From Haliotis cracherodii (lineage: Eukaryota), in NCBI RefSeq assembly GCF_022045235.1, contig NW_027266275.1, positions 73,036,001 to 73,100,000 of the forward strand: a stretch of DNA of 64,000 nucleotides, written 5' to 3'. Position 1 is the stretch's first letter. Each line of letters opens with the position of its first letter. Positions 2,502-63,724 of this stretch are shown here, in pieces. Made by a program: the position numbers and the translations under genes. The notes under the pieces were generated by a model that worked only from the letters and a program-made list of their open reading frames with translations, ran no database searches and was not told the DNA's origin.

Positions 2502-5500
2502 CTGACAACACAACAGTCACAAAATTAGTAAACTGATAATTTACATCAATGATCACACAAGTTGATCAAAATGTTTCCATCATTGTTTGACCAAGGTTTG
2601 GTCACTAACATGTTTTCCTTGATCAAAGGGTGTGGGATGACAAGGGCGCTCAAATACTTTGACTTTTAACACTTACTACATATTTAGCTATCCATGAAAC
2701 AATCTTAAACTACTTGCAAACACAGTAGAAGCCCATTAACCACCATCACCTGAAAGTTCCCAATACATTGAAATACCAGTTCACAGAGATTAGTGCCATG
2801 CCATGATCTACATGAGATCCAATAGTAACCAGTCTTTCGATTGTACATGTAAAACCTAGCACTGAATGACATAACAATGTTTCACAATAACATCAAAGAT
2901 GACCTTGACATAATTATTAATAAAACGCCAGCAACATTTGGTAGAATGTGTAAAATTTAAAGCTATACCTGTAGAAGTTACCATGCCTCAGAGTGAGTGA
3001 GTGAGTATGTTTTTCTGCCGCTTTGAGCAATATTCCAGCAATATCACAACAGGGGACACCAGAAATTGGCCTTACACATTGTACCCATGATGAGAATCGA
3101 ACCTGGGTCTTCGGCATGACGAGCGAACACTTTAACCCCTAGGCTACCCGACCGTCCACCATGACGCAGAAACTACCAATGATATAACCAAGTTCCATAC
3201 AAGTCTGAATACTAACATTAACCAATGACTTCCTTTGACCTCAACCTTCTCAAAGCAGGGCCTCCTACCACAGAAGGTGTACACAAAGTTTAATGACAAA
3301 CACATGAACACTTAACAGAGAATTGTAGCAATCTTGTGAGCATAACCTTTCATGTGGAATAAGTCCATTTTGGAAAATGTCAGTAACCTTGGCACCATAT
3401 TCAAGAGAAGATGATTAAACCAACACTAACCAGATGTTTGGGAAATCTTTTTTTGCCGGCAACGCCAACGCATGCCATGGAGAGGTCGATGCAAACTTGC
3501 TGCGACAGGTCGAGGTAGGTCGCCATGTAGGTGCGGCTGTAGTGGCCGACCAGGAGAGGCTCCAGGATGTCTTGATGCGTATCTGGAAGTCAACAGAGGG
3601 ACAACTGATCACATCCAACAGGTGTTACTGTAACCACATAACACATCTGATAGTTGTAACATTGGCATGATTACATGTCAAAGAGGTAGTTTGTGGATAA
3701 AGTTCCATGTAATACATAAAACATTCAACAGATTTAATTCTCATTTATGATATCATTTAGGGCTGGGACGGGTAACTCGGGTACCCGGGTCGGGTGGGTC
3801 CTGAGTAGGACCTTGGTACCCAAAGGACTACCCGAACCCGTTGTTTGTCACGTGATATATATTGTTTGATGACTAAAAATATCTAAAACTCTATGATTAC
3901 ACTATAAGTCCCTTATAAATATCCCATTTCTTTCTGACAATGCACCCATTCCTTCTGACTTTTATATGTTTGAATAAAGATAAAACTTCATACATTAAAC
4001 TTCAGGGTATGCATGAGCGGATCGTCTTACACGTGTATCTGAAATCATTTTGACAGGGCTAAGGTCAAACGTTTCCAAATCGGACAGTTTGTACCTATCT
4101 CTAAGTATCTACAGCGGGTACCCGGGTAGGGTCGGATAATAGGGTGGTGGGTACCCGGGTAGTAAATTTGGACCTGTCCCAGCCCTAATATCATTTGTAA
4201 AGCATTATAATTAAAAAAGATGATCACCATTTTATACCGAGGTTCGAGGCTGGTTTGGGTAGCCTAGAAGGATGTGTTCGCTCATCACACAGAAGGCCTG
4301 GCTTTGAACCCTTAAAAGGGTACAATGTGTAAACCCCATTTCTGGTGTCCCTCTCCATTTCTGGTGTCCCTCTCCGTAATATTTCTAAAAGTCTGCAAAG
4401 CTTGATAGAATGGTACATGTTATGTATTGTGAAATTCTCACCAGTTAAAAATTTGCAGGCCTTCAACAGACTGTCAGCAGAAACTTCCGCCCCACTGAAG
4501 TGATTCTTGTCACAAACAGCCTCAATGGCTTCAGCCACTTGAATGTCCAGTGTGTCGGATTCCGATCGGACTTTCAACAGATTGTCCAAAGCTGTCAAAC
4601 AAAATATCAGATAGATCACATTCATACTTCTGTTACAGCGATAAAGTATCGGTTAAAAAAATATTCAAATGAATGTGCAGGATGGTCATTCTACCAGTCA
4701 GTGATTGCCAATGTGGTATTAGATCTTTGGGATAAAATATTGTGAATTGTCATAAAATGATCAAAAACATATCTATACAATGTTCATGATGTACAAAAGT
4801 AATTCCTGGTTATTTATAATGATATAGTTTAGCTATTGACATGTTTCATAAAGAAGATGTGTTACCTTTCACTGTGTATTCACACCCTATACAGTAAATG
4901 TCTGAAACAAAAAGTAGAGAATTATACCAGAGTAAATAAACCATTTCCTTAATCATAAGAAATCTTAAAACCAGAGTCCATTTATCACTCCAACTATATC
5001 ATAAGCATGTGTTTATGAATCACAATCAAATAGTGATACCAGGTGTTCATGAAAGGTTACTGGTAGGCATATCCTCAGTGGCACCCATTACAAACAAATG
5101 CAAAGGCAAGTCAATTGTTCACAAAAATATAGATTGGGTCACATGGTACATGTCAAAATAGGAAATTGCATCGGATAAGTTTCACCGATGCATCAAATTT
5201 GGAGGGAGTGGGTGAGTATGGTTTTACGCCGCTTTTGGCAATATTCCAGCAATATCACGGGGGGGGGGGGGGGGACACCAGAAATAAGCTTTACACATTG
5301 TGTGCATGTCCGGAAAGGAACCCGGGTCTTCGGGATGAAGAGCGAACGCTTAAACCATTAGGCTACCCGACCGCCCCAATCAAATTAGGAAATGTCTTCC
5401 ACATGTGTACCATAGTTTAAAAAAAGTTTTGCTAAGGTCTTGAATGTTTTAACCCAAGTTAAAAAACTTATAAGTAACAAGTCATATGATATGCTCTTTG

Positions 5501-10960: not shown

Positions 10961-12048
10961 GGAACATTGGCCTTTGCTGCCCAGAATGCTTATCGTAAGG
11001 CAAACCAAGGTATCCCTGACCTATACACACACAACGTATTCGGGGTCTATTCTGCACTGCACCCACCAAGGGGAGGCAACTCTGGCATCTGGCGACAAAT
11101 CTGTCTGCCATCCTCGCGGGAGGTTCTGACAATACCCTTTGTCGTTGAGGACAGTCTAAAGCAGTGGGACTGACTGCTATTTCTCTGCTTGAGTCAACAG
11201 CTTACCGTGGTGGGGTCCTGTCAGGTAAACTCAACCTACCCTCTAGCAAACTGTAACATAAGAGAATGTTTACTGTAGATGCCTTCAGCAGATTTGTCTC
11301 TGATCATGGGGATTAGCAGTCTTCACGCCGTAAAGAGAATCCGAAAGGCAAAGAGGCCTTAGATGGCGGGCAAGTTAATCGGTGTAAATGTGGACGGTGG
11401 GATTCGGCTTAGAGTCTGGAAGACTCATGTAGATTCGAGTTTGTACACAGCGCCAGGTCGGAGGTGGCTTGACTGGCTGTGTATCGCGCGTCGGAGACAC
11501 CCACAACGGCGACATGAGACGCCTGCAGCACGCCCGTGTGGTCATCTGCCGCCACTGTGCCGCTACCGTCACTTCCACCCCTCAGTACATGACTGTCTCC
11601 ACACGCAGGGCACGTCCGAAAAACACCACAAGACCCCCGGGCGTCGGAGCCTATAGAAATACAACCTACGTATACAAACATCTCTACACAAGGTGCGAAA
11701 ATAACGATATTCTCAGTGTTCTTCTGCCTGGGGTCTGGGTGTCACCAGTACAGTTGTCTAGTAGGCCTCTAAAGTAAATGATCTGGCACCCAAGTTATGT
11801 ACATAACGTGAGCATGGAGCGCGTGCTGTTGGATGTAGCAATGTGTATTCCTCACAGCAAGGCTTAAAGCCGACAAAGGGTCATATTTTAAAGACAGAAC
11901 ACAATCCTCCTTGTTTGTTGTGCTGATCAGGTCAAACATGTCCGTCCTTCCAGTTGGTCTTATGCTGCAGAAACTTGTTATAACGTAACCCAATAACACG
12001 GGATGGAGTGAGACTGAACGTGAGAAACAATACCACAGAGGCAGGAAG

Positions 12049-12210
12049 AGTGAGTGAGTGAGTTTGGTTTTACGCCGCTTTTAGCAACATTCCTGCAATA
12101 TCACAGGAGGGGGGGGGGGGGGGGGGCAGAAATGGGCTTCACACATTGTACCCATGTCGGGGATCGAACTCGGCATGACGAGCGAACGCTTTAACCACTA
12201 GGCTACCCCA
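12049..12210 (-). mobile_element. SINE family A
   Basis: (GAGT)n tail, family A body, internal poly-G run. Confidence 0.9.
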
Positions 12211-12284
12211 ATGCCCAAGAGACAGGAAGAACTGGCACCACAGGGAATAAAACACATGAGAAGTACATTGCTCACCAGTAGTCT

Positions 12285-12470
12285 GGGGCGGTCGCGTGGC
12301 CTAGTGGTTAAAGCGTTCGCTCGTCACGCCGAAGACCTGGGTTCGATTCCCGACATGGGTACAATGTGTGAAGCCCATTTCTGGTGTCCCCCGCCGTGAT
12401 ATTGCTGGAGTACTGCTAAAAGCGGCGTAAAACCATACTCACTCACTCACTCACTCACTCACTCACTCAC
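12285..12470 (+). mobile_element. SINE family A, young full-length copy
   Basis: Intact A box (TGGCCTAGTGG) and B box (GGTTCGATTCCC), long (CACT)n tail, 14-bp TSD CTCACCAGTAGTCT at 12271-12284 and 12466-12479. Confidence 0.95.
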
Positions 12471-33020: not shown

Positions 33021-33494
33021 AAGGATGACGCTGTGGTGGGGTGACGGGTGGTGATGTGACAGGGTACATGGAAGAGGATTTGGTGGTGTGCAGTTGTACA
33101 CCCTCGTCAATAAAATAACGTATCCTTTTCACCATCACGATGTGTTATGTTTGTGTGTCATCCCTGCTGGTCCGTGTTATACGTGCAGCTCCTACACGCC
33201 ATGGGGAGGTTTAAGGGACACTGACAGGGATGACGAAATATGTTGAATGATTGGCAAATGATAAACCAGACTAAAATATATCTTATGAACCCAGGTGGTA
33301 AAAACGGGACAAGGATTTTACGAGAGCATGTTTCGACTTGAGATTAAAGGCTCGAACCCTTCCCCTAATCGTTAAACCCTTTATTAACCACACAACACAG
33401 AATAGTTCTTCATGTGGATATGGTATAGAGTATGTGTGGTGAAAGGTTTCGTAAATACAGAATTATATCCACGAGTCAGCGAACAGGGACAGAA

Positions 33495-35070
33495 AGTCCA
33501 CTTCAAAGCCATCCCAAGTTCACTTCAAGTCCATCCCAAGTTCACTTCAAGTCCATCCCAAGTTCACTCCAAGTCCATCCCAAGTTCACTTCAAGTCCAT
33601 CCCAAGTTCACTCCAAGTCCATCCCAAGTTCACTTCAAGTCCATCCCAAGTTCACTCCAAGTCCATACCAAGTTCACTTCAAGTCCATCCCAAGTTCACT
33701 CCAAGTCCATCCCAAGTTCACTTCAAGTCCATACCAAGTTCACTTCAAGTCCATCCCAAGTTCACTTCAAGTCCATCCCAAGTTCACTCCAAGTCCATCC
33801 CAAGTTCACTTCAAGTCCATACCAAGTTCACTTCAAGTCCATCCCAAGTTCACTTCAAGTCCATCCCAAGTTCACTTCAAGTCCATCCCAAGTTCACTCC
33901 AAGTCCATCCCAAGTTCACTTCAAGTCCATCCCAAGTTCACTCCAAGTCCATCCCAAGTTCACTTCAAGTCCATCCCAAGTTCACTCCAAGTCCATACCA
34001 AGTTCACTTCAAGTCTATCCCAAGTTCACTCCAAGTCCATACCAAGTTCACTCCAAGTCCATCCCAAGTTCACTTCAAGTCCATCCCAAGTTCACTCCAA
34101 GTCCATCCCAAGTTCACTTCAAGTCCATCCCAAGTTCACTTCAAGTCCATCCCAAGTTCACTTCAAGTCCATCCCAAGTTCACTCCAAGTCCATCCCAAG
34201 TTCACTTCAAGTCCATCCCAAGTTCACTTCAAGTCCATCCCAAGTTCACTTCAAGTCCATCCCAAGTTCACTTCAAGTCCATCCCAAGTTCACTTCAAGT
34301 CCATCCCAAGTTCACTTCAAGTCCATCTCAAGTTCACTTCAAGTCCATCTCAAGTTCACTTCAAGACCATCCCAAGTTCACTTCAAGACCATCCCAAGTT
34401 TACTTCAAGTCCATCCCAAGTTCACTTCAAGTCCATCCCAAGTTCACTTCAAGTCCATCCCAAGTTCACTTCAAGTCCATCCCAAGTTCACTTCAAGACC
34501 ATCCCAAGTTCACCCAAGTCCATCCCAAGTTCACTTCAAGTCTATCCCAAGTTCACTCCAAGTCCATCCCAAGTTCACTTCAAGTCCATCCCAAGTTCAC
34601 TCCAAGTCCATACCAAGTTCACTTCAAGTCTATCCCAAGTTCACTCCAAGTCCATACCAAGTTCATTCCAAGTCCATCCCAAGTTCACTTCAAGTCCATC
34701 CCAAGTTCACTCCAAGTCCATCCCAAGTTCACTTCAAGTCCATCCCAAGTTCACTTCAAGTCCATCCCAAATCCACTTCAAGTCCATACCAAGTTCACTT
34801 CAAGTCCATCCCAAGTTCACTTCAAGTCCATCCCAAGTTCACTTCAAGTCCATCCCAAGTTCACTTCAAGTCCATCCCAAGTTCACTTCAAGACCATCCC
34901 AAGTTCACTTCAAGACCATCCCAAGTTCACTTCAAGTCCATCCCAAGTTCACTTCAAGTCCATCCCAAGTTCACTTCAAGTCCATCCCAAGTTCACTTCA
35001 AGACCATCCCAAGTTCACTTCAAGACCATCCCAAGTTCACTTCAAGTCCATCCCAAGTTCACTTCAAGCC
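33495..35070. repeat. Minisatellite, 22-bp unit of two 11-bp halves (caagtccatcc caagttcactt)
   Basis: Highly homogeneous; about 70 units. Confidence 0.96.
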
Positions 35071-37319: not shown

Positions 37320-38945
37320 TGGGAATATACTAGACACTGAAGTCAAGGAGACGGGAGATATGGGATGGGATATTAGCCACTCAATTCATGAAGATTGGGA
37401 TATACTAGACGTTGAATTCTTGAAGATTGGGGATATATTAGACGTTGAATTCTTGAAGATTGGGGATATATTAGACGCTCAAGTGGGAAGAGACGAGAGA
37501 TAAACTCGACACTTAAGTCGGGAGAAACGAGCGATAAACTAGACGCTCAAGAGGGAAGAAACGAGAGATCAACTAGGCGCTCAAGTCTGGGAGACGATAT
37601 ATCAACTCGAAGCTCAAGTCGGAAGAAACGAGAGATAAACTCGACGCTCAAGTGGGAAGAAACGAGAGATAAACTCGGCGCTCAAGTCGGAAAAGACGAT
37701 ATATCAACTCGACGCTCAAGAGAGAAGAAACGAGAGACCAACTAGACGCTCAAGAGGGAAGAAACGAGCGATAAACTAGACGCTCAAGTTGGAAGAAACG
37801 AGCGATAAAGAAGACGCTCAAGAGGGAAGAAACGAGAAACCAACTAGACGCTCAAGAGAGAAGAAACGGGAGATCAACTAGACGCTCAAGTGGGAAGAAA
37901 CGGGAGATCAACTAGACGCTCAAGTCGGAAGAAACGAGCGATAAACTAAACGCTCAAGAGGGAAGAAACGAGAGATCAACTAGGCGCTCAAGTCGGGGAG
38001 ACGATATATCAACTAGACGCTCAAGTGGGACTGAGTGAGTGAGTGAGTTTGGTTTTACGCCGCCTTTAGCAATATTCCAGCAATATCACGGCGGGGGACA
38101 CCAGAAATGGGCTTCACACATTGTACCCATGTCGGGATTCGAACCCGGGTCTTCGGCGTGACGAGCGAACGCTTTAACCACTAGGCTACCCGACCGCCCC
38201 CGCCTAAGTGGGAAGAAACGAGAGATAAACTAGACGTTCAAGAGGGAAGAAACGCGAGATCAGCTCGACACTTAAGTCGGAAGAGACGAGAGACCAACTA
38301 AACGCTCAAGTCAGAAGAGACTAGAGACCAGCTAGACGCTCAAGTCGGAGGAGACGAGAGATCAACTAGATGCTCAAGTCAGAAAGGACGAGAGATCAAA
38401 TAGATGCTCAAGTCGGAAGAAACGAGAGATCAACTCGACACTTAAGTCGGAAGAGACGAGAGACCAATTCGACGCTGAAGTCGGAACAGACGAGAGATCA
38501 ACTAGATGCTCAAGTCGGAAGAGACTAGAGATCAACTAGATGCTCAAGTCGGAAGAAACGAGAGATCAACTAGATGCTCAAGTCGGAACAGACGAAAGAC
38601 CAACTTGGCGCTCAAGTCGAAGAGACGAGAGATCAATTAGACGCTCACGTCGGAACAGACGAGAGATCAACTAGATGCTCAAGTCGAAGAGACGAGAGAT
38701 CAACTAGACGCTCACGTCGGAACAGACGAGAGATCAACTAGATGCTCAAGTCGGAAGAGACGAGAGATCAACTAGATGCTCAAGTCGAAGAGACGAGAGA
38801 TCAACTAGACGCTCACGTCGGAACAGACGAGAGATCAACTAGACGCTCACGTCAGAACAGACGAGAGATCAACTAGACGCTCACGTCGGAACAGACGAGA
38901 GATCAACTAGATGGTCAAGTTGGAAGAGACGAGAGACCAACTCTC
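37320..38945. repeat. Minisatellite, 33-34-bp unit (gacgctcaagtcggaagaaacgagagatcaacta)
   Basis: Diverged 33-bp units at the 5' end; interrupted by a SINE. Confidence 0.93.
38032..38200 (-). mobile_element. SINE family A inserted inside the 34-bp minisatellite
   Basis: Near-consensus copy with repeat units on both sides. Confidence 0.93.
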
Positions 38946-42746: not shown

Positions 42747-42912
42747 GTGAGTGTTAGTCAGTGTTGTTTTACGCCGTTTTAAGCAATATTCCAGCAATAT
42801 CACGGCGGGGGACACCAGAAATTGCCCTCACGCATTGTACCCATGTCGGGAATCGAACTCGGATCTTCGGTGTGACGAGCGAACGCTTTAACCACTAGGT
42901 TACACGACCTCC
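42747..42912 (-). mobile_element. SINE family A
   Basis: Family A body and tRNA-like head, followed by poly-C/(CA)n. Confidence 0.88.
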
Positions 42913-47945: not shown

Positions 47946-48404
47946 ATACTTAAATAAGCCAATGTCGAGTAGCGGGTTGTTGTAAAACACATATCCTCAT
48001 TTGTCATGCCTCTCTGCCGGGGGGTTGCTGGGGGGTTGCCAGGGGTTGAGTTGGGTCGAGGGTGACACCCAGGGGGTCCTACTGACGGAGACATCTACAT
48101 TCCTTAAATAGGTACAGCATGTGGTATAGACATGGCCCCTTTATAGCGTGGTATAAGTCACGTTAACAATGGTGAAGAATCTCTTGTTTGAGGCTAGATG
48201 ACACTCCACAAATATGTAGATTTCTGTTGTTATGAAATGTATGCGAATGATGTGAGACGGCTGGAGGACAAGTATCGTGGCAGGGTACCTGTCATTCTAG
48301 ACTTATGAAAACAATCGCACCTCATAAACTCCTGTCACGTGTACCTGTGTCAGAGCGTAACGTGTTTACAAACAGATAAGTCTTGTTCTTATTTGAAGAT
48401 ACCA

Positions 48405-50056
48405 AAAGCGTACACCCCGTCCACGTATAGATGACAGATGACATACACCCCGTCTACCTGTAGATGACAGATCACATACACCCCGTATACCTGTAGATGG
48501 CAGATCACATACACTTCGTGTACCTGTAGATCACATACACTCCGTCTACCTGTAGATGACAGATCACATTCACTCCGTCTACCTGTAGATGACAGATCAC
48601 ATTCACTCCGTCTACCTGTAGATGACAGATCACATTCACTCCGTCTACCTGTAGATGACAGATCACATTCACTCCGTCTACCTGTAGATGACAGATCACA
48701 TTCACTCCGTCTACCTGTAGATGACAGATCACATACACCCCGTATACCTGTAGATGGCAGATCACATACACTTCGTGTACCTGTAGATCACATACACTTC
48801 GTCTACCTGTAGATGACAGATCACATTCACTCCGTCTACCTGTAGATGACAGATCACATTCACTCCGTCTACCTGTAGATGACAGATCACATTCACCCCG
48901 TCTACCTGTAGATCACATACATCCCGTCTACCTGTAGATGACAGATCACATACACTCCGTCTACCTGTAGATGACAGATCACATACACTCCGTCTACCTG
49001 TAGATGAAAGATCACATACACTCCGTCTACCTGTAGATGAAAGATCACATACACTCTGTCTACCTGTAGATTACAGATAACATACGCCCCGTCTACCTGT
49101 AGATGACAGATCACATACACCCCGTCTACCTGTAGATGACAGATCACATACACTCCGTCTACCTGTAGATGACAGATCACATACACCCCGTCTACCTGTA
49201 GATGACAGATCACATACATCCCTTAAACCTGTAGATGACAGATCAGATACAACCCGTCTACCTGTAGATGACAGATGACATACATCCAGTCTACCTGTAA
49301 ATGACAGATCACATACACCCCGTCTACCTGTAGATGACAGATCACATACATCCCTTAAACCTGTAGATGACAGATCACATACACTCTGTCTACCTGTAGA
49401 TGACAGATCACATACACCCCGTCTACCTGTAGATGACAGATCACATACACTCCGTCTACCTGTAGATGACAGATCACATACACCCTGTCTACCTGTAGAT
49501 GACAGATCACATACATCCCGTCTACCTGTAGATGGCAGATCACATACACCCCGTCTACCTGTAGATGACAGATCACATACACCCCGTCTACCTGTAGATG
49601 ACAGATCACATACACTCCGTCTACCTGTAGATGACAGATCACATACACTTCGCCTACCTGTAGATGACAGATCACATACACCCCGTCTACCTGTAGATGA
49701 CAGATCACATACACTCCGTCTACCTGTAGATGACAGATCACATACACTCTGTCTACCTGTAGATGACAGATCACATACATCCCGTCTACCTGTAGATGAC
49801 AGATCACATACACCCCGTCTACCTGTAGATGACAGATCACATACACCCCGTCTACCTGTAGATGACAGATCACATACACTTCGCCTACCTGTAGATGACA
49901 GATCACATACACCCTGTCTACCTGTAGATGACAGATCACATACACTTCGCCTACCTGTAGATGACAGATCACATACACCCCGTCTACCTGTATATGACAG
50001 ATCACATACATCCCATCTACCTGTAGATGACAGATCACATACACCTCGTCTACCTA
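48405..50056. repeat. Minisatellite, 33-bp unit (tctacctgtagatgacagatcacatacaccccg)
   Basis: About 50 units. Confidence 0.96.
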
Positions 50057-51445
50057 TAGCACTGATATAGGTGTGACATTGGTGTAGGGAAGATGGCAGT
50101 GATATAGGTGTGACATGGGTGTAGGGAAGATAGCAGTGATAAAGGTGTGACATGGGTGTAGGGAAGATAGCAGTGATATAGGTGTGACATGGGTGTAGGG
50201 AAGATGGCAGTGATATAGGCGTGACATGGGTGTAGGAAAGATAGCAGTGATATAGGTGTGACATGGGTGTAGGGAAGATGGCAGTGATATAGGTGTGACA
50301 TGGTTGTAGGGAAGATGGCAGTGATATAGGCGTGACATGGGTGTAGGGAAGATAGGAGTGATATAGGTGTGACATGGGTGTCGGGAAAATGGCAGTGATA
50401 TAGGTGTGACATGGGTGTAGGGAAGATGGCAGTGATACATGTGTGACATGGGTGTAGGGAAGATAGGAGTGATATAGGTGTGACATGGGTGTCGGGAAAA
50501 TGGCAGTGATATAGGTGTGACATGGGTGTCGGGAAGATGGCAGTGATACATGTGTGACATGGGTGTAGGGAAGACAGCAGTGATATAGGTGTGACATGGG
50601 TGTAGCGAAGATAGGAGTGATATAGGTGTGACATGGGTGTAGGGAAGATGGCAGTGATAAAGGTGTGACATGGGTGTAGGGAAGATAGGAGTGATATAGG
50701 TGTGACATGGGTGTAGGGAAGACAGCAGTGATATAGGTGTGACATGGGTGTAGGGAAGATAGGAGTGATATAGGTGTGACATGGATGTCGGGAAGATGGC
50801 AGTGATATAGGCGTGACATGGGTGTAGGGAAGATGGCAGTGATATAGGCGTGACATTGGTGTCGGGAAGATGGCAGTGATAAAGGTGTGACATGGGTGTA
50901 GGGAAGATAGCAGTGATATAGGTGTGACATGGGTGTAGGGAAGATAGCAGTGATACATGTGTGACATGGATGTAGGGAAGATAGCAGTAATATAGGTGTG
51001 ACATGGGTGTAGGGAAGATGGCAGTGATATAGGTGTGACATTGGTGTCGGGAAGATAGCAGTGATACATGTGTGACATGGGTGTAGGGAAGATAGCAGTG
51101 ATACATGTGTGACATGGGTGTAGGGAAGATAGCAGTGAGAAAGGTGTGACATGGGTGTAGGGAAGATAGGAGTGATATAGGTGTGACATGGGTGTAGGGA
51201 AGATAGCAGTGATACATGTGTGACATGGGTGTCGGGAAGATAGCAGTGATAAAGGTGTGACATGGGTGTCGGGAAGATAGCAGTGATGCATGTGTGACAT
51301 GGGAGTCGGGAAGATGGCACTGATAAAGGTGTGACATGGGTGTCGGGAAGATAGCAGTGATATAGGTGTGACATGGGTGTAGGGAAGAGAGCAATGATAC
51401 ATGTGTGACAAATAAAGGGAAGATAGCAAGTATACGTGAGTGACA
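50057..51445. repeat. Minisatellite, 37-bp unit (gtgatataggtgtgacatgggtgtagggaagatagca)
   Basis: About 37 units; directly abuts the 33-bp array. Confidence 0.96.
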
Positions 51446-52260: not shown

Positions 52261-52859
52261 GCATTCTAGTTTTCAATTAGGTTAAAATTTGTAAATAGTT
52301 TATTAACTAAAATATTTTTTTCAATTTCCCTAGTTGTGTAATGAGGACTGTGATTCCATCTTCATCTGGTATATCATATATCTTCCGGATAACATGGATC
52401 AATGTTCGGCTGATGAAGAGGGTATATCCATCCCATCCATTTCTGCTAGATGGCATTTCTCGATTCCGCCAAATATTTTCCAACTGTCCGTGTGATGTTT
52501 AATAGAAAAAATAACACTTTTTGTCCCTACTTTGTATTAAAACGTTAACGACATGAAGGACCTCCCTCAATCTGTATGGGACAATAGCTGGCATGAGGGG
52601 GTCAATCATTTCCAATTTGTGTTTGTCACTAGAGCTACTTGTTTTCTTTACGTCATTGCCTGGGATTGTAGCATTTTGTTTACCAGGTGTTAATTATCGC
52701 GTGCATTGTGTGAAGAGAGTGTTGTTTTCTCTCCATGTGTGTACCACTCTCCCCAGGTGTGCAACACTCAAGGGCTTACTCTCCCCCTCTCCGGCGTCAC
52801 AACACCCCCTGACGCCGACACCGCTCGCTATACAAGCCTCGCTTGTCACCATCCTCACA

Positions 52860-52995
52860 GCAGGGATTGGGTGTCTCGCTAATTAGGGCGTTAATTAGAA
52901 CTGTTAATTGTTGACACCTCTGTGAAATGACGTCACTTAACCCCAGCCCCTCGCTCACCCTGGTCAGTCTTCCCCGTCCGGACACAGGTGAGACA
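52860..52995 (+). promoter_or_regulatory. Candidate noggin core promoter plus ~22-nt non-coding exon 1
   Basis: ATTGG (reverse CCAAT) 52866-52870; TAATTA at 52880 and 52892; TTAATTG at 52904; palindromic CRE TGACGTCA 52928-52935; initiator-like TCAGTC 52964-52969; donor CAG|GTGAGA at 52987/52988. Confidence 0.55.
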
Positions 52996-54942
52996 CCCTC
53001 GGTTTATGCTTGAGAACTTTTCACATGTCAATTCTTTTACTTCTGAAATGATTACCATTGATGTTCTCCGATAGCTGTACCCTACCTATGTCGTAGTATG
53101 CAGCGCCTCTCAGAAACTGTTTAAATAAGATCTACTAAATCAACGCCGATGCTCCATTTCCGCATTTAGTAATACATGATTATTGTCGAAGACGTTTAAA
53201 TTAATATAAATCTATAATATTGTAGAACTGTATTTTACAACGATACGTAGAGAATTTAACCGCCAAAGCCGTGTTGTTGGGTTCCACGTAATATTTAATA
53301 AAAATGTATATGTTAAAAGTATGTTATAAAAGGAGACGTGACTTCTCAGATGCTCACAACTTATTCAAGCTTTCATCGCTGTGGCTTATCTCTATTCATC
53401 CCGTAAAAAACAAGACTGTAGTTATTTTCTCTGTAGTATTTAGGAGCCACGTGTAATTTGTCCGTGAATCTAGTCTACGCATCACCCGGCGCCGACTGGC
53501 CCACGGCGCTGTTTATAGATACACGCAGGCATTGTTTTCTCTTACCGTGCCCAATATAAGTGTAGTGGAGGGCTGTGGCTCGGAGTCGTAATGCGCTTCA
53601 GGAAGTAACGCGACTCTATCCCCAACAACCGAAACTATTACACAACAGACGCAGACTGAGTGATATTTATACACTAGTATTTAGTATGTGACGTTGATTG
53701 TGTTGCACGCCCTCATGTTGTATTGTATTTCCAACATATCCCGAGTATGTTTCTGCGGCATGTTGTTCAGATTCCGGTGGTTATACTTGCAATGTCGGTA
53801 ATCGATATGATAAATGTCTGCATATTATGGAAACCGGTTTGAGAATGCTCTTTGATGTATGGACACGGGTTGTACAGAGTTTGGAAGTTCGTGTTTTAGT
53901 GATAGTCTGGGGAATTACGTTGTATCAAAGATTTTCTCGCAGAAAGTTCCAATGAGCCGATTTTAAATGTCTTTCTTCATTTTGGTAGTACATTTGTTAA
54001 GCATAAGAGTACTGAATGATGTCAAGGGTCAGACATGTAGTGCATTGGTACTTGTCACGACCCTGTCACTAGTGACTGTCCCCGATTGCCTCCAACCCCT
54101 TATTATAGATTACCAGCCCCCATTTTGCATTAAACTACACGGGGACCCTTGTCGCCCACAGCACGACAGAAGGGTGCACAGGCGGCGGCATATGACGCCC
54201 TGTAGTACTGGTTTAAACCGCGGGGTCCGACCTCTAAGGCACATGCACAACATATACTCACGTAAGTAATTTTTACCACGTGCAACTGTACATACGGCTG
54301 TATATGGTATAATTTATATGTATAGTGTATTATGCGTTCACAAGAAAATTAGGTGTGTTAATAAGGTATTTTAATAGTGTAAAGAACACATATTCATCAG
54401 TCCGTCGACTTACAACATGAAAAGGTTGTTTTCCAATGAAAGTCGAATGAGAAGAGATTTACCTTACAGAAATCTTCGCATGAAACTACATGTGGTTGAT
54501 TTCATCTATACACACTTGTTTGACTCCTTGAAACCAAAAGAAAACACCGCCCGCCCTGCTCCGAATGTCGTTTTGATGTATACTGAATAGCGTCAACTTC
54601 AGAATACAGAACTGTTGACAATTTTGTTTGGTATTTGCAAACAGTTATATAAGTAATACAATCCTTTTAACGTTCACATTACAACGTGTACATACAGTGC
54701 AAATTTGCATCTGCTACAGACATGATGCAAATTTGCTCCTGGTGTAAAAATACACACCTGAGTAAACGCGTTCACATGACAGGTATTCTCGCGTATGTAT
54801 ATTTACACACGTATGGAAATATACACACATGTAAAGAGGTGTATATGAACGGGGTATTAAGTCTCATAACAAGGATCCGCGGGGTTTGGGTTCGAATCCA
54901 GGGTCACAACAGTTTCTCCGCATTAGGTATGCGCTAGTGCTG

Positions 54943-55116
54943 CAGTAAACTTCGTTTATAACGAACACGCTTATAACGAACTTCCGGATATAACGAACTG
55001 TTTCTTGGTCCCGTCCATTTTGTGGATAGATGTTGTACATATGTTTATAACGAACTACGGTTGTAACGAATTAAAAGTAGTGGTCCCATTGAAGTCGTTA
55101 TAACCGTAGTTTACTG
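54943..55116 (+). mobile_element. Tc1/mariner (pogo/Tigger-like) MITE in the putative noggin intron
   Basis: TIR CAGTAAAC / GTTTACTG, TA at the right end, internal TATAACGAA repeats. Confidence 0.85.
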
Positions 55117-55328
55117 TAATGGTTTCAAAGGGTAGTGTTAAACGCGCGACTCAAACATTCTATATTTTTACATGGACCACAAATATACACGTGAAATATG
55201 AACTGTTGAGCGAATCATTCTTTAAGTTATCCTTTTTATGTTATATAACCAACCACGGTTCATCGTGTTCATAATACGTACCACCTGTAGTTATGATAGT
55301 AACCGTGTACGACTCTTGTTTCAGATAG

Positions 55329-55497
55329 AGGGCGGTTGGGTAGTCTAGTAGTTAAAGCGTTCGCTCGTCGCGCCGAACACCCGGGTTCGATACCCACATG
55401 TGTACAATGGGTGAAGCCCATTTCTGGTGTCCTCCGCTGTGATATTAATGGAATATTGCTATAAGCGGCGTAAAACCATACTCATTCACTCACTCAC
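55329..55497 (+). mobile_element. tRNA-derived SINE family A at the putative noggin splice acceptor
   Basis: A/B-box head (TAGTCTAGTAG...GGTTCGATACCC), (CACT)n tail, perfect 12-bp TSD TGTTTCAGATAG at 55317-55328 and 55498-55509. Confidence 0.93.
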
Positions 55498-55522
55498 TGT
55501 TTCAGATAGCAAGACGCGAAGG

Positions 55523-56248
55523 ATGATGTCTCCCCCTCCAAGCTTGCTGGTACTGATGCTTTTCTGGCTGCTTCCCCACACGCGAGGAACGCAGGTCTAC
55601 TTTAAGCTTCTGAAGGCGGAGGACCCCCAGACTGACAATTCCCTGTACCCCCGGGACGGCACCCGACCTCTCCCCTCCGACCGCCTGCCTATTGAAGGCA
55701 TTGTGGAGACGCGAGACAAATACTACGATCCCCGCCCCGAGGAGGTTAACAGGAAGAAACTGATGGCGCTTCTAGGCAGTGACTACGATAGAGAGTTTAT
55801 GTCCGTTAAATCACCACGAAGGAAGAACGGGACTCTAGAGTATAAGTTTCATAAAGGACGCCCCGTTGGAAAGAAACCAGGATTCCTAAGGTTAATTCAG
55901 ACGATGCAGTTGCAAGATGGGCCAACGTTAAAGTTGAAAGTGAGTAAGAAGGATAGAAGGAAGTTCCAGAAGTTTTTATGGAGTTACTCTTATTGCCCCG
56001 TGAAGTACGTGTGGAGGGACCTTGGGGGGAGGTTCTGGCCCCGCTGGATCAGGGACGGTCTGTGCTCCACCCAGAGGTCGTGCTCCCTCCCCCCGGGGAT
56101 GGTGTGTAAACCCAGCAAATCCACCACCAAAACAATTCTCAGGTGGCACTGCCGGAAGTGGCAAAGGCGCGATGCATGCCGGTGGATTAAGATCCGCTAT
56201 CCTGTAATTACAGCTTGTGCGTGTTCCTGTCAGACGGAGGGAGAATGA
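55523..56248 (+). CDS. nog: Noggin (secreted BMP antagonist), 241 aa, single coding exon
   Basis: Signal peptide MMSPPPSLLVLMLFWLLPHTRG; clip motif RPLPSDRLP..I.E..D..YDP; LLGSDYD..FMS; basic heparin-binding region; cystine-knot motifs CPVKYVWRDLGGRFWPRWI, SCSLPPGMVCKP, ILRWHC, C.WI...YPVITAC.CSC (nine Cys). Confidence 0.97.
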   Translation: MMSPPPSLLVLMLFWLLPHTRGTQVYFKLLKAEDPQTDNSLYPRDGTRPLPSDRLPIEGIVETRDKYYDPRPEEVNRKKLMALLGSDYDREFMSVKSPRRKNGTLEYKFHKGRPVGKKPGFLRLIQTMQLQDGPTLKLKVSKKDRRKFQKFLWSYSYCPVKYVWRDLGGRFWPRWIRDGLCSTQRSCSLPPGMVCKPSKSTTKTILRWHCRKWQRRDACRWIKIRYPVITACACSCQTEGE

Positions 56249-57009: not shown

Positions 57010-57150
57010 CATTTTGTTATTTATATTTATAGATTCATTGTTATGAACGAACACTTCGTTAATCTTTAATGGATATCAATCTGTACATATGTTATTTGTA
57101 AATTTGACATGTGTATAATATCAATGTGATTAAATTATTGATTAAACATG
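57010..57150 (+). terminator. Candidate 3' end region of the noggin mRNA
   Basis: AU-rich ATTTA motifs at about 57019-57030 and two ATTAAA variant poly(A) signals at about 57129 and 57141. Confidence 0.35.
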
Positions 57151-58229: not shown

Positions 58230-58410
58230 ACCGCCTTCGTGGTCTAGTGGATAGAGCGCCTGTCAGAGAACGGAAGGTTCGGGGTTCGATCCCCTGATCA
58301 CATCATACCAAGAGACGTATAAGATGGTACTTGTTGTTACCCCTCCTGGCGCTCGGTATTAAGGGGGCAACACAAGGACAACCACAAACAGACACATACA
58401 CATGCATATG
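58230..58410 (+). mobile_element. V-SINE (family B), internally deleted
   Basis: Head ccgccttcgtggtctagtgg...ggttcgatcccc...gatggtacttgttgttacc; core missing. Confidence 0.8.
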
Positions 58411-58544
58411 AGTTTAATCCCGTCTCCCTATGGCCGTGAAGACATATGTGTCCGCGTTGTTACTAACAATATGGCATAAAATACATATTATATACTTGGA
58501 AGTGCCGGACTAGGACTACCGAGCCACACACATGGTGACGTAGT

Positions 58545-60530
58545 GTAGTGATGCTGACACCGAGTCCATTGTAACGCCGAACACCACGCTGACACCCGAC
58601 TCCATTGTAACGCCGAACACCACGCTGACACCCGACTCCATTGTAACACCGAACACCACGCTGCCACCCGACTCCATTGTAACACCGAACACCACGCTGC
58701 CACCCGACTCCACTGTAACACCGAACACCACGCTCCCACCCGACTCCATTGTAACACCGAACACCACGCTGCCACCGGCTCCACTGTAACACTGAACACC
58801 ACGCTGACACCCGGCTCCACTGTAACACTGAACACCACGCTGCCACCCGACTCCATTGTAACACCGAACACCACGCTGCCACCGGCTCCACTGTAACACC
58901 GAACACCACGCTGCCACCCGACTCCACTGTAACACTGAACACCACGCTGACACCCGACTCCATTGTAACACTGAACAGCATGCTGACACCCGACTCCACT
59001 GTAACACTGAACACCACGCTGACACCCGACTCCATTGTAACACCGAACACCACGCTGACACCCGACTCCACTGTAACACTGAACACCACGCTGACACCCG
59101 ACTCCATTGTAACACTGAACACCACGCTGACACCCGACTCCACTGTAACACTGAACACCACGCTGACACCCGACTCCATTGTAACACCGAACACCACGCT
59201 GACACCCGACTCCACTGTAACACTGAACACCACGCTGACACCCGACTCCATTGTAACACCGAACACCACGCTGACACCCGACTCTATTGTAACATCGAAC
59301 ACCACGCTGCCACCCGACTCCACTATAACACTGAACACCACGCTGACACCCGACTCCATTGTAACACTGAACAGCATGCTGCCACCCGACTCCACTGTAA
59401 CATCGAACACCACGCTGACACCCGACTCCACTGTAACACTGAACACCACGCTGACACCGGCTCCATTGTAACACCGAACACCACGCTGCCACCCGACTCC
59501 ACTGTAACACTGAACACCACGCTGACACCCGACTCCATTGTAACACCGAACACCACGCTGACACCGGCTCCACTGTAACACTGAACACCACGCTGACACC
59601 CGACTCCATTGTAACACTGAACACCACGCTGACACCGGCTCCACTATAACACTGAACACCACGCTGACACCGGCTCCACTGTAACACTGAACACCACGCT
59701 GACACCCGACTCCATTGTAACACTGAACACCACGCTGCCACCCGACTCCATTGTAACGCCGAACACCACGCTGACACCCGACTCCACTGTAACACTGAAC
59801 ACCACGCTGACACCCGACTCCATTGTAACACCGAACACCACGCTGCCACCCGACTCTATTGTAACATCGAACACCACGCTGCCACCCGACTCCACTGTAA
59901 CACTGAACACCACGCTGACACCCGACTCCATTGTAACACCGAACACCACGCTGACACCCGACTCCACTGTAACACTGAACACCACGCTGACACCCGACTC
60001 CATTGTAACACCGAACACCACGCTGACACCCGACTCCACTGTAACACCGAACACCACGCTGCCACCGGCTCCATTGTAACACCGAACACCATGCCGACAC
60101 CCGACTCCATTGTAACACCGAACACCACGCTGACACCCGACTCCACTGTAACACTGAACACCACGCTGCCACCGGTTCCACTGTAACACCGAACACCACG
60201 CTGACACCCGACTCCATTGTAACACCGAACACCACGCTGACACCGACTCCACTGTAACACTGAACACCACGCTGACACCCGACTCCATTGTAACACCGAA
60301 CACCATGCCGACACTCGGCTCCATTGAACATCGAACACCATGTTCCATTTTAACACTCGGCTCCATTTTAACATTGAACACCATGACACCGGCTCAATTG
60401 TAGCATCGAACACCATGGCACCCGGCTCCATTTTAACACCAAACACCATGCTAACACCGGCTCCATTGTAACACCGAACACCATGCTAACACCGGCTCCA
60501 TTGTAACACCGAACAGCATGCTGACACCAC
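58545..60530. repeat. Minisatellite, 35/36-bp unit (caccacgctgacacccgactccattgtaacaccgaa)
   Basis: About 55 units, decaying at the 3' end. Confidence 0.96.
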
Positions 60531-63481: not shown

Positions 63482-63724
63482 GAGTGAGTGAGTGAGTGAG
63501 TGAGTGGGTGTGTGGGTGAGTGGGTGAGTGAGTGAGTTAAGTGAGTGAGTGAGTGAGTGAGTGAGTATGGTTTTACGCCGCTTTTAGCAATATTCCAGCA
63601 ATACCACAGCGGATGGGGGATTGAAGTGCGGGGTGCACCAGAAATGGGCTTCACACATTGTACCCATGTTCCATGTGGGGCACTGAACCGGGCCCTCGGC
63701 GTGACGAGCGAACGCTTTAACCAC
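63482..63724 (-). mobile_element. SINE family A with expanded (GAGT)n tail
   Basis: About 85-bp GAGT microsatellite followed by the family A body. Confidence 0.88.

What the first reader, a model, noticed from the sequence alone, without database searches (positions are those of the whole stretch)
55300..55530. SINE insertion duplicates the putative noggin 3' splice site: a possible splice/translation switch on a BMP antagonist
Seen: a full SINE (55329-55497) lies 25 bp upstream of the noggin ATG. Its perfect 12-bp TSD, TGTTTCAGATAG, contains a TTTCAG acceptor, so the acceptor is present twice (AG at 55323-24 and 55504-05). The upstream copy keeps the native TAAC branch-like motif and pyrimidine tract. 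The downstream copy is preceded by the SINE (CACT)n tail, whose CTCAT/CTCAC fits the yUnAy branch consensus. Inference: the upstream site would put 181 extra nt in the 5' UTR, including a 14-codon uORF (ATG 55398, MCTMGEAHFWCPPL, stop 55440-42) and an in-frame ATG at 55448 that adds 25 aa (MEYCYKRRKTILIHSLTVSDSKTRR) before the signal peptide. The downstream site would restore the ancestral mRNA. Isoform choice or presence/absence polymorphism could therefore tune Noggin dose or secretion.
Basis: partly seen in the sequence, partly recalled or inferred. Interest (0 to 1): 0.85.

Follow-up and report, generated by a model that had tools for sequence, protein, structure and literature searches.

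The report
SINE on abalone noggin splice acceptor
An old short jumping element landed exactly on the intron/exon border just before the start of an abalone noggin gene and copied the splice acceptor, so the gene now has twin acceptors; which one the cell uses could not be tested, and insertions of this kind are already known from other animals.

Summary
A 169-bp tRNA-headed SINE (55329-55497) has a perfect 12-bp target-site duplication, TGTTTCAGATAG (55317-28 and 55498-509). It lies 25 bp before the ATG of a clear noggin gene (Pfam Noggin, 1e-68).

New here: the TTTCAG is a real acceptor. The NCBI model "noggin-2-like isoform X1" of Haliotis rufescens starts with 20 residues that window 52927-52986 encodes exactly. 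These are followed by G|GTGAGA, and G + AT(55506-07) gives the D found in that protein.

That exon carries its own ATG:
- With the downstream acceptor, the ATG is in frame with noggin (267 aa).
- With the upstream acceptor, the 181 extra nt shift the frame.

The copy is old (K2P 0.095 from the family majority). It is probably fixed and shared with H. rufescens, so polymorphism is unlikely.

Acceptor choice, and so the proposed "switch", is untested.

The closest known case is the merle SINE in dog PMEL. I file this as a new member of a known kind, of modest interest.

The parts
52927..52987 (+). 3' part of noggin exon 1. It holds an ATG at 52927, 20 codons and a final G. The true 5' end (TSS) is unknown; the surrounding 52760-52987 is 56% G+C.
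   Evidence: Encodes MTSLNPSPSLTLVSLPRPDT, 100% identical to the N-terminus of H. rufescens noggin-2-like isoform X1. Single copy in the genome. G+C.
52988..52993 (+). 5' splice donor GTGAGA of intron 1
   Evidence: Sequence ACAG|GTGAGA. The phase (1 nt carried over) matches the D codon G+AT of the H. rufescens protein.
52988..55505 (+). Intron 1 if the downstream acceptor is used (2518 nt, SINE inside). It ends at 55324 (2337 nt) if the upstream acceptor is used.
   Evidence: Inferred from the donor and from the exon1-exon2 junction of P0054. G+C is 40%, against 53-56% in the exons.
55298..55316 (+). Native branch-point-like AGTAAC (A at 55302, 22 nt before the AG) and a moderate pyrimidine tract for the upstream acceptor
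   Evidence: Read from the sequence. The nearest upstream AG is at 55298, so the AG-free zone is 55300-55322. No function was tested.
55317..55328 (+). TSD copy 1, TGTTTCAG|ATAG: the upstream twin acceptor (AG 55323-24)
   Evidence: Exact 12-mer found twice in the window, 0 expected.
55329..55497 (+). tRNA-headed SINE in sense orientation. Head about 55333-55403, (CACT)n-type tail about 55478-55497. It has 15 substitutions and 1 indel against the family majority.
   Evidence: Copy number and identity. Alignment of 41 copies with TSDs and tails. K2P 0.095. Near-consensus copies match Rfam tRNA at 24-28 bits, against a threshold of 29.
55398..55442 (+). 14-codon uORF inside the SINE, present only in a SINE-containing leader. 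Its second ATG (55407) has A at -3 and G at +4.
55448..55450 (+). ATG in frame with noggin, created by changes private to this copy (55447 G>A, 55448 C>A against the majority). Its context is weak (T at -3).
55462..55464 (+). TAA that would end the exon-1 ORF if the upstream acceptor were used (66 codons in all)
   Evidence: Translation of 55327-55530. The 181-nt insertion shifts the frame by one.
55498..55509 (+). TSD copy 2, TGTTTCAG|ATAG: the downstream twin acceptor (AG 55504-05). It is preceded by the CUCAC/CUCAU-rich SINE tail.
   Evidence: Exon 2 read from 55506 reproduces the DSKTR(R/S)MM junction of P0054.
55523..56248 (+). Noggin coding sequence (241 aa plus stop), all within exon 2
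   Evidence: PF05806 at 1.1e-68. In the same 90%-identity cluster as NCBI noggin-2-like proteins of H. rubra, H. asinina and H. rufescens; the window's own 241-aa sequence is itself on record from NCBI/UniRef. Cystine-knot cysteines are invariant.
57129..57146 (+). Candidate poly(A) signals (AATAAA/ATTAAA-type hexamers at 57129 and 57141), where G+C falls
   Evidence: Pattern scan and composition profile. Not verified.

Best explanation
**Gene structure.** The abalone noggin gene has two exons. Exon 1 is short and ends at 52987. It is followed by an intron of about 2.3-2.5 kb. Exon 2 holds the whole coding sequence.

**The insertion.** A tRNA-derived SINE retrotransposed, in sense orientation, exactly onto the intron 1/exon 2 border. 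The staggered target cut duplicated 12 bp that include the acceptor TTTCAG.
- The copy next to the exon got a new upstream context from the SINE's (CACT)n tail. This tail is pyrimidine-rich and full of CUCAC/CUCAU branch-like motifs, so a complete acceptor was rebuilt beside the exon.
- The upstream copy keeps the native branch site and pyrimidine tract.

**Most likely present state (inferred, not shown).** Splicing mainly uses the downstream acceptor. The SINE then behaves as intron sequence and the ancestral mRNA is made. That mRNA includes an exon-1 ATG in frame with noggin. The upstream twin gives at most a minor isoform. In that isoform the 181 extra nt shift the exon-1 ORF into a 66-codon uORF and add a further uORF, so noggin would be poorly translated.

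**Age.** The insertion is old and probably fixed. In effect it is tolerated and near neutral.
For: Shown:
- The TSD and SINE are real.
- The ORF is noggin.
- Exon 1 and its GT donor sit at 52927-52993, in the phase required by the H. rufescens isoform X1 protein.
- The reading-frame consequences of each acceptor are as stated.
- The copy differs from the family majority at 15 of 169 sites plus 1 indel (K2P 0.095). The youngest copies are at 0.012-0.03.

Inferred:
- The black-abalone and red-abalone proteins differ at only 1 of 241 residues, and at 1 of 26 leader residues. The split is therefore much younger than a 9.5% diverged SINE, and the SINE is probably also present in H. rufescens.
- If so, isoform X1, which joins exon 1 straight to ATAGCAAG, shows that the downstream acceptor works with the SINE present.
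- The downstream site has the better pyrimidine tract: 12 of 16 pyrimidines at -5 to -20, against 10 of 16 upstream. It also has branch-like A's 13-21 nt upstream (AG map).
- The SINE's B box has decayed and a new ATG has arisen in it. Both fit neutral drift of intron sequence.
- A SINE-containing leader is not unusually structured (z +1.58).
Against: - No RNA evidence from this species was obtainable.
- The upstream acceptor keeps every native signal: AGTAAC 22 nt upstream, the same last 8 intron nt and the same first 4 exon nt. It is also transcribed first, so it could compete well.
- NCBI lists only a 241-aa protein for this genome, not the 267-aa form expected from exon 1 plus the downstream acceptor. 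That fits transcripts without the exon-1 ATG, or transcripts that contain the SINE.
- H. rufescens has two further transcripts that encode the 241-aa form. Their structure is unknown, and one could be the SINE-containing isoform.
- The SINE's presence in H. rufescens is inferred only from divergence levels.
- Both TSD copies are still perfect. The chance of that is about 0.10 if all 9.5% divergence arose after insertion. This could hint at constraint on both copies.
Confidence: 0.5

Rival explanations
1. True alternative 3' splice-site pair. Both twin acceptors are used at appreciable levels. One mRNA class has the ancestral leader. The other carries 181 nt of SINE, in which a 66-codon exon-1 uORF and a 14-codon uORF damp noggin translation. 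Isoform choice then tunes Noggin dose.
For: - Both sites have a full set of signals of similar strength.
- The frame shift and the uORFs are real.
- H. rufescens has three annotated transcripts giving two protein forms, so leader heterogeneity exists at this locus.
- Both TSD copies are intact despite about 9.5% divergence of the SINE.
Against: - No junction data.
- Alternative leaders in H. rufescens can equally come from other start sites or from another donor.
- Nothing indicates regulation.
- The intact TSD is only weakly unexpected (p about 0.1).
Confidence: 0.3
2. The upstream acceptor dominates. The SINE is then a constitutive part of the 5' UTR, and Noggin is made by leaky scanning or reinitiation at 55523, possibly partly from ATG 55448.
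For: - The upstream site keeps the whole native intron context and is transcribed first.
- The annotated protein of this genome is 241 aa, not 267 aa.
Against: - If the SINE is shared with H. rufescens, isoform X1 shows the downstream site in use.
- A strongly uORF-laden leader on a dosage-sensitive BMP antagonist would probably have been selected against over the time needed for 9.5% divergence (inference).
- With the SINE in the mRNA, an annotation pipeline would probably have called the 266-aa ORF from 55448 (inference).
Confidence: 0.1
3. In this species most noggin transcripts start inside intron 1, close to exon 2 (for example downstream of the TATATAA at about 55243). Neither acceptor would then matter, and the SINE would be plain 5' UTR or promoter-proximal DNA.
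For: - A TATA-like motif lies about 75 bp upstream of the insertion site.
- Vertebrate noggin genes are single-exon (established knowledge).
- The annotated protein here is 241 aa.
Against: - The exon-1/exon-2 junction is modelled in the sister species. Its donor, acceptor and phase are all conserved here.
- The region just upstream of the SINE has intron-like G+C (35-41%).
- The noggin-like paralogue also has an acceptor-like TTGCAG 9 nt before its ATG.
Confidence: 0.07

Closest known systems
Merle SINE (SINEC_Cf) at the intron 10/exon 11 border of dog PMEL/SILV (review PMC7349775, read)
   Same: A SINE inserted exactly at an intron/exon border. Its TSD (15 bp there, 12 bp here) contains the original splice acceptor. 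SINE sequence supplies the pyrimidine tract. The outcome depends on competition between the original acceptor and an upstream one.
   Different: - The merle SINE is antisense. Its poly(T) is the new pyrimidine tract, and the competitor is a cryptic site inside the SINE. Here the SINE is in sense orientation with a (CACT)n tail, and the competitor is the duplicated native acceptor itself.
- Merle changes the coding sequence and has a proven phenotype that depends on tail length. Here only the 5' leader would change, and no effect has been shown.
- Merle is a recent polymorphism. This copy is old.
Intronic SINE or Alu insertions near splice sites that cause mis-splicing (for example canine FAM161A, PMC3976383, listed), and Alu exonisation in 5' UTRs (established knowledge)
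   Same: A retroposon close to a 3' splice site can shift splice-site choice or become part of the mRNA, adding uORFs.
   Different: Those cases are usually exon skipping or cryptic-site activation with disease effects. Here the exact native acceptor is duplicated, and the gene seems to have tolerated the insertion for a long time.
Published abalone and mollusc SINE families: MESC/MetaSINE (HalSINE1, Hdi) and LP-SINEs (PMC4758252, PMC4824008)
   Same: Short, TSD-flanked, abundant gastropod retroposons. Tandem-repeat tails imply mobilisation by a partner LINE. The MESC/MetaSINE members also have a tRNA-derived head.
   Different: - Haliotis MESC SINEs are reported to end in (CACCT)n and to hold a (CA)n microsatellite. 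This family ends in (ACTC)n/(CACT)n and shows no (CA)n.
- LP-SINEs have a LINE-derived head, not a tRNA head.
- I did not test for the Meta/MESC central domain, so the family assignment is open.
Noggin (PF05806), secreted cystine-knot BMP antagonist
   Same: Full-length Pfam match, conserved cysteines, hydrophobic N-terminal leader. In the same 90%-identity cluster as annotated Haliotis noggin-2-like proteins.
   Different: Vertebrate noggin genes are intronless (established knowledge). The abalone gene has a 5' exon whose ATG can extend the protein by 26 aa.

Membership tests
Noggin (Pfam PF05806) | Significant full-length match to the Noggin profile | tested here: met
   E 1.1e-68, 231.6 bits (cut-off 24.1), profile positions 22-211 of 211.
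Noggin (Pfam PF05806) | Conserved C-terminal cystine-knot cysteines | tested here: met
   C158, C181, C187, C195, C210, C219, C232, C234 and C236 are invariant in an alignment with 9 noggins from molluscs, a brachiopod and a fish.
Noggin (Pfam PF05806) | N-terminal secretion signal | not tested
   A hydrophobic stretch, SLLVLMLFWLL, follows the MMSPPP start. No signal-peptide predictor was available.
tRNA-derived SINE | Short (<500 bp), non-coding, high copy number | tested here: met
   169 bp. 6208 first-look candidates; all 40 scored were near full length. Eight more copies or fragments lie in the window.
tRNA-derived SINE | tRNA-like head with Pol III A and B boxes | tested here: inconclusive
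   Near-consensus copies match Rfam tRNA RF00005 over the whole model at 24.3-28.4 bits, just under the gathering score of 29. ARAGORN calls no tRNA. The B-box-like GGTTCGATTCCCG is visible in the family but mutated in this copy.
tRNA-derived SINE | Copies flanked by variable target-site duplications, with a simple-repeat 3' tail | tested here: met
   Different TSDs of about 8-14 bp are visible around many copies, with (ACTC)n tails of variable length. This copy has a 12-bp perfect TSD.
Splice-acceptor-duplicating retroposon insertion (merle type) | Insertion exactly at an intron/exon border, with a TSD that contains the authentic acceptor AG | tested here: met
   The exon1-exon2 junction is deduced from the H. 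rufescens isoform X1 protein and from the donor G|GTGAGA at 52987|52988. It places the acceptor at CAG|AT inside the TSD.
Splice-acceptor-duplicating retroposon insertion (merle type) | Demonstrated change of splice-site use or of the mRNA | not testable with these tools
Splice-acceptor-duplicating retroposon insertion (merle type) | Antisense SINE whose poly(T) acts as the pyrimidine tract | tested here: not met
   The SINE is in sense orientation. Its tail is (CACT)n, not poly(A)/poly(T). The resemblance is in logic, not in detail.
Haliotis MESC/MetaSINE (Hdi, HalSINE1) | Tail (CACCT)n, internal (CA)n microsatellite, Meta/MESC central domain | tested here: inconclusive
   The tail here is (ACTC)n and there is no (CA)n, unlike the published description. 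The central domain was not compared because no reference sequence was available.

The most novel reading that the evidence does not exclude
The twin acceptors form a working, possibly stage-regulated alternative 3' splice-site pair born from a single SINE insertion.
- The downstream site gives an mRNA in which the exon-1 ATG reads straight into Noggin.
- The upstream site adds 181 nt. These shift that ATG into a 66-codon uORF and add a second uORF, giving a translationally damped mRNA.

A retroposon would thus have given a BMP antagonist a new post-transcriptional dose control in North Pacific abalones.
Probability: 0.15. Interest if true: 0.6.

Novelty: new member of a known kind. Interest (0 to 1): 0.35.

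Why it matters
Noggin sets BMP signalling levels in development, so any change to its leader could alter dose. This locus is a clean natural case in which one retroposon insertion duplicated an authentic acceptor and also supplied a replacement branch site and pyrimidine tract. That may explain why an insertion at such a sensitive spot survived.

If both acceptors are used, it would be an invertebrate example of a SINE creating an alternative, uORF-bearing leader on a developmental regulator. If only the downstream one is used, it is a neat but neutral 'self-healing' insertion.

The corrected gene model (5' exon, in-frame upstream ATG) is useful for annotating the noggin gene of this abalone. 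The assembly's size and scaffold count match black abalone, an endangered species.

Tried and rejected
3. An exact pattern scan of JGI metagenome contigs for the acceptor-to-ATG stretch found nothing. This was expected for an animal locus and says nothing.
4. ARAGORN finds no tRNA in this copy or in eight near-consensus copies. Only Rfam's tRNA model gives near-threshold matches.
5. An Rfam scan of 54800-56000 gave only a chance-level snoRNA match (E 0.84). Rejected.
6. I tested whether a SINE-containing leader is unusually structured. It is not (z +1.58, 195 of 200 shuffles fold at least as well).
7. The idea that 'TLVS' in the H. rufescens extension came from unspliced read-through of the region just upstream of the acceptor was rejected. 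The whole 20-aa extension maps to 52927-52986.
8. Earlier findings of the scan hold nothing on this locus beyond the finding itself.
9. Literature searches found no paper on abalone noggin structure or on this insertion, and no numerical black/red abalone divergence.
10. I did not build a species-specific splice-site model because no intron set was available. The site comparison is qualitative.
11. Following the operators' rule, the joined (spliced) 267-aa and SINE-containing models were not searched or looked up. Exons were translated separately by reference.

Full report
**What is in the sequence**

- The 12-mer TGTTTCAGATAG occurs exactly twice in the 64-kb window, at 55317-55328 and 55498-55509. 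None was expected in 100 dinucleotide-preserving shuffles.
- The 169 bp between the two copies (55329-55497) is a member of a very abundant repeat. The genome search found 6208 first-look candidates. All 40 that were scored are near full length at 91-93% identity.
- An alignment of 41 copies shows a common 5' end (G/A)GGGCGGT..., an (ACTC)n/(CACT)n tail of variable length, and different short target-site duplications around individual copies.
- Near-consensus copies match Rfam's tRNA model over its whole length at 24-28 bits, just under the gathering score of 29. ARAGORN calls no tRNA.
- This is therefore a tRNA-headed SINE moved by a LINE that recognises a tandem-repeat tail.
- The ORF 55523-56248 is noggin: PF05806 at E 1.1e-68, with all cystine-knot cysteines conserved.

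**Which genome**

- The 241-aa protein is on record from NCBI/UniRef and sits in a 90%-identity cluster with 'noggin-2-like' proteins of Haliotis rubra, H. asinina and H. rufescens.
- The assembly has 80 sequences and 1.18 Gb. This matches the H. cracherodii (black abalone) row of a published table of abalone assemblies (PMC11393055).

**The key new result: the acceptor is real, and there is an upstream exon**

- H. rufescens has a 267-aa isoform X1 (P0054) whose first 26 residues, MTSLNPSPSLTLVSLPRPDT-DSKTRS, precede the MMSP start of the 241-aa form.
- A tblastn of that N-terminus against the window finds the first 20 residues, 100% identical, at 52927-52986.
- The DNA there reads ...CCG GAC ACA G|GTGAGA. 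This is a consensus donor with one base carried over.
- That G plus AT at 55506-07 makes GAT = D, followed by SKTRR MMSPPP. This is exactly the junction in the H. rufescens protein.
- Donor, acceptor and phase are all canonical at once. Intron 1 therefore runs from 52988 to the CAG inside the TSD.
- Further support:
  - Exon 1 is single copy in the genome.
  - Exon 1 is G+C-rich (56%), against 40% for the intron.
  - A noggin-like paralogue 20 kb downstream has an acceptor-like TTGCAG 9 nt before its ATG.

**Consequences of each acceptor**

These were translated exon by exon by reference.
- Exon 1 carries an ATG at 52927 (G at -3). It has an in-frame stop upstream and no other ATG back to 52735.
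- Downstream acceptor (exon 2 from 55506): this ATG is in frame with noggin and would give a 267-aa protein like isoform X1.
- Upstream acceptor (exon 2 from 55325): 181 nt are added, which shifts the frame by one.
  - The exon-1 ORF then reads D-RGRLGS...DINGILL and stops at 55462-64. This is a 66-codon uORF ending 58 nt before the noggin ATG.
  - It overlaps the in-frame ATG at 55448. That ATG also has a poor context (T at -3).
  - The 14-codon uORF is real, and its second ATG (55407) has a strong context.
- A SINE-containing leader would thus be a poor template for Noggin. It is not unusually structured (z +1.58).

**Age of the insertion**

- Against the family majority, this copy has 15 substitutions (9 transitions, 6 transversions, only 2 at CpG) and one deletion. 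This gives K2P 0.095.
- The youngest copies are at 0.012-0.03.
- Nine bystander copies found by chance in the window and in locus flanks range from 0.024 to 0.136, with a median of about 0.095.
- No genomic copy is closer than 93% to this one, so most differences are private and probably arose after insertion.
- ATG 55448 itself comes from two such changes, and the B box is damaged.
- The black-abalone and red-abalone proteins differ at 1 of 241 residues, and at 1 of 26 leader residues. H. rubra and H. asinina differ at 13-14 residues.
- I infer, at about 75%, that the insertion predates the black/red split. It would then be fixed, and presence/absence polymorphism is unlikely.
- If the SINE is present in H. 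rufescens, isoform X1 shows the downstream acceptor working with the SINE in place.

**Strength of the two sites (qualitative)**

The two sites share the last 8 intron bases and the first 4 exon bases.

| Feature | Upstream acceptor | Downstream acceptor |
|---|---|---|
| Branch-like motif | AGTAAC, A at 55302, 22 nt before the AG | CUCAU/CUCAC, A's 13-21 nt before the AG |
| AG-free zone | 23 nt | 38 nt |
| Pyrimidines at -5 to -20 | 10 of 16 | 12 of 16 |

Both look competent, so sequence alone cannot decide between them.

**What could not be done**

- No tool reached another abalone genome.
Afterwards I used a 29-nt pattern from 55501-55529 in one metagenome scan (blank), and the noggin protein in a search of the window's own genome.

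**Verdict**

- The structural half of the interpretation, that a real acceptor was duplicated by the TSD, is supported and extended by the discovery of exon 1.
- The functional half, a splice/translation switch or a polymorphism that tunes dose, is untested. Its details needed correction.
- My odds:

| Reading | Odds |
|---|---|
| Downstream acceptor predominates; the SINE tail and TSD rebuilt the acceptor, so the insertion is tolerated as intron | about 0.5 |
| Both acceptors used appreciably | about 0.3 |
| Upstream acceptor dominant | about 0.1 |
| Transcripts starting inside the intron | under 0.1 |

- The closest known case is the merle SINE in dog PMEL. Its 15-bp TSD also contains the original acceptor, and SINE sequence there also competes for splicing (PMC7349775). 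It differs in orientation, tail type, age and proven effect.
- This is a new member of a known kind, worth a quick look in RNA-seq and in sister genomes, but not a new principle.

Noticed in passing
window 52927-52987: The exon-1 ATG is in frame with noggin when exon 1 is joined to 55506. It adds 26 aa before the signal peptide, as in H. rufescens isoform X1. Whether this extended pre-protein is made and secreted is unknown.
   Followed up: partly
window 52957-52968: A second donor-like site, CTG|GTCAGT, lies inside exon 1 (exon would end at 52962). Joined to 55506 it would put the exon-1 ORF out of frame, with its stop TGA at 55524-26 overlapping the ATGATG start of noggin. This is a possible basis for 241-aa-coding transcript variants. 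Read from the sequence only.
   Followed up: no
window 52880-52912: Three TAATTA/TAATTG homeodomain-type motifs lie within 30 bp, just upstream of the exon-1 ATG, in the G+C-rich exon-1/promoter region.
   Followed up: no
L034 1324-2136 (-) = G000:C12:73112088-73112900, about 20 kb beyond the noggin gene and outside the window: A second, divergent noggin-like gene (38% identity over the cystine-knot half; 260 aa from the first ATG, MRMND) lies on the opposite strand, tail to tail with this one. It has TTGCAG 9 nt before its ATG.
   Followed up: partly
window 8100-51300 and 58400-60300: The region upstream of the gene is packed with long minisatellite arrays (periods 11/22, 25, 29, 33, 34, 36, 37 and 48 bp; for example 33349-34000+, 48396-49770+, 49945-51317+). 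Another array lies downstream of the gene.
   Followed up: no
window 12286-12454 (+), 38032-38199 (-), 2991-3157 (-), 42747-42912 (-), 5202-5376 (-), 12048-12216 (-), 63549-63724 (-): Seven more copies of the same SINE family lie in the window. Six were dated and range from K2P 0.024 to 0.136 from the family majority; the 63549-63724 copy starts at SINE position 20 and was not dated. The family has been active over a long period.
   Followed up: partly
window 54950-55110: A cluster of repeated ATAACGAA(C/T) motifs (about eight within 160 bp) lies in intron 1. It is probably part of another repeat element.
   Followed up: no
loci L004, L014, L016, L017 (SINE flanks): Several other copies of this SINE also have TSDs ending in ...TTTCAG, ...GTTTCA, ...GAGCAG or ...CTCCAG. 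This could be chance, or a target preference that favours acceptor-like sequence.
   Followed up: no
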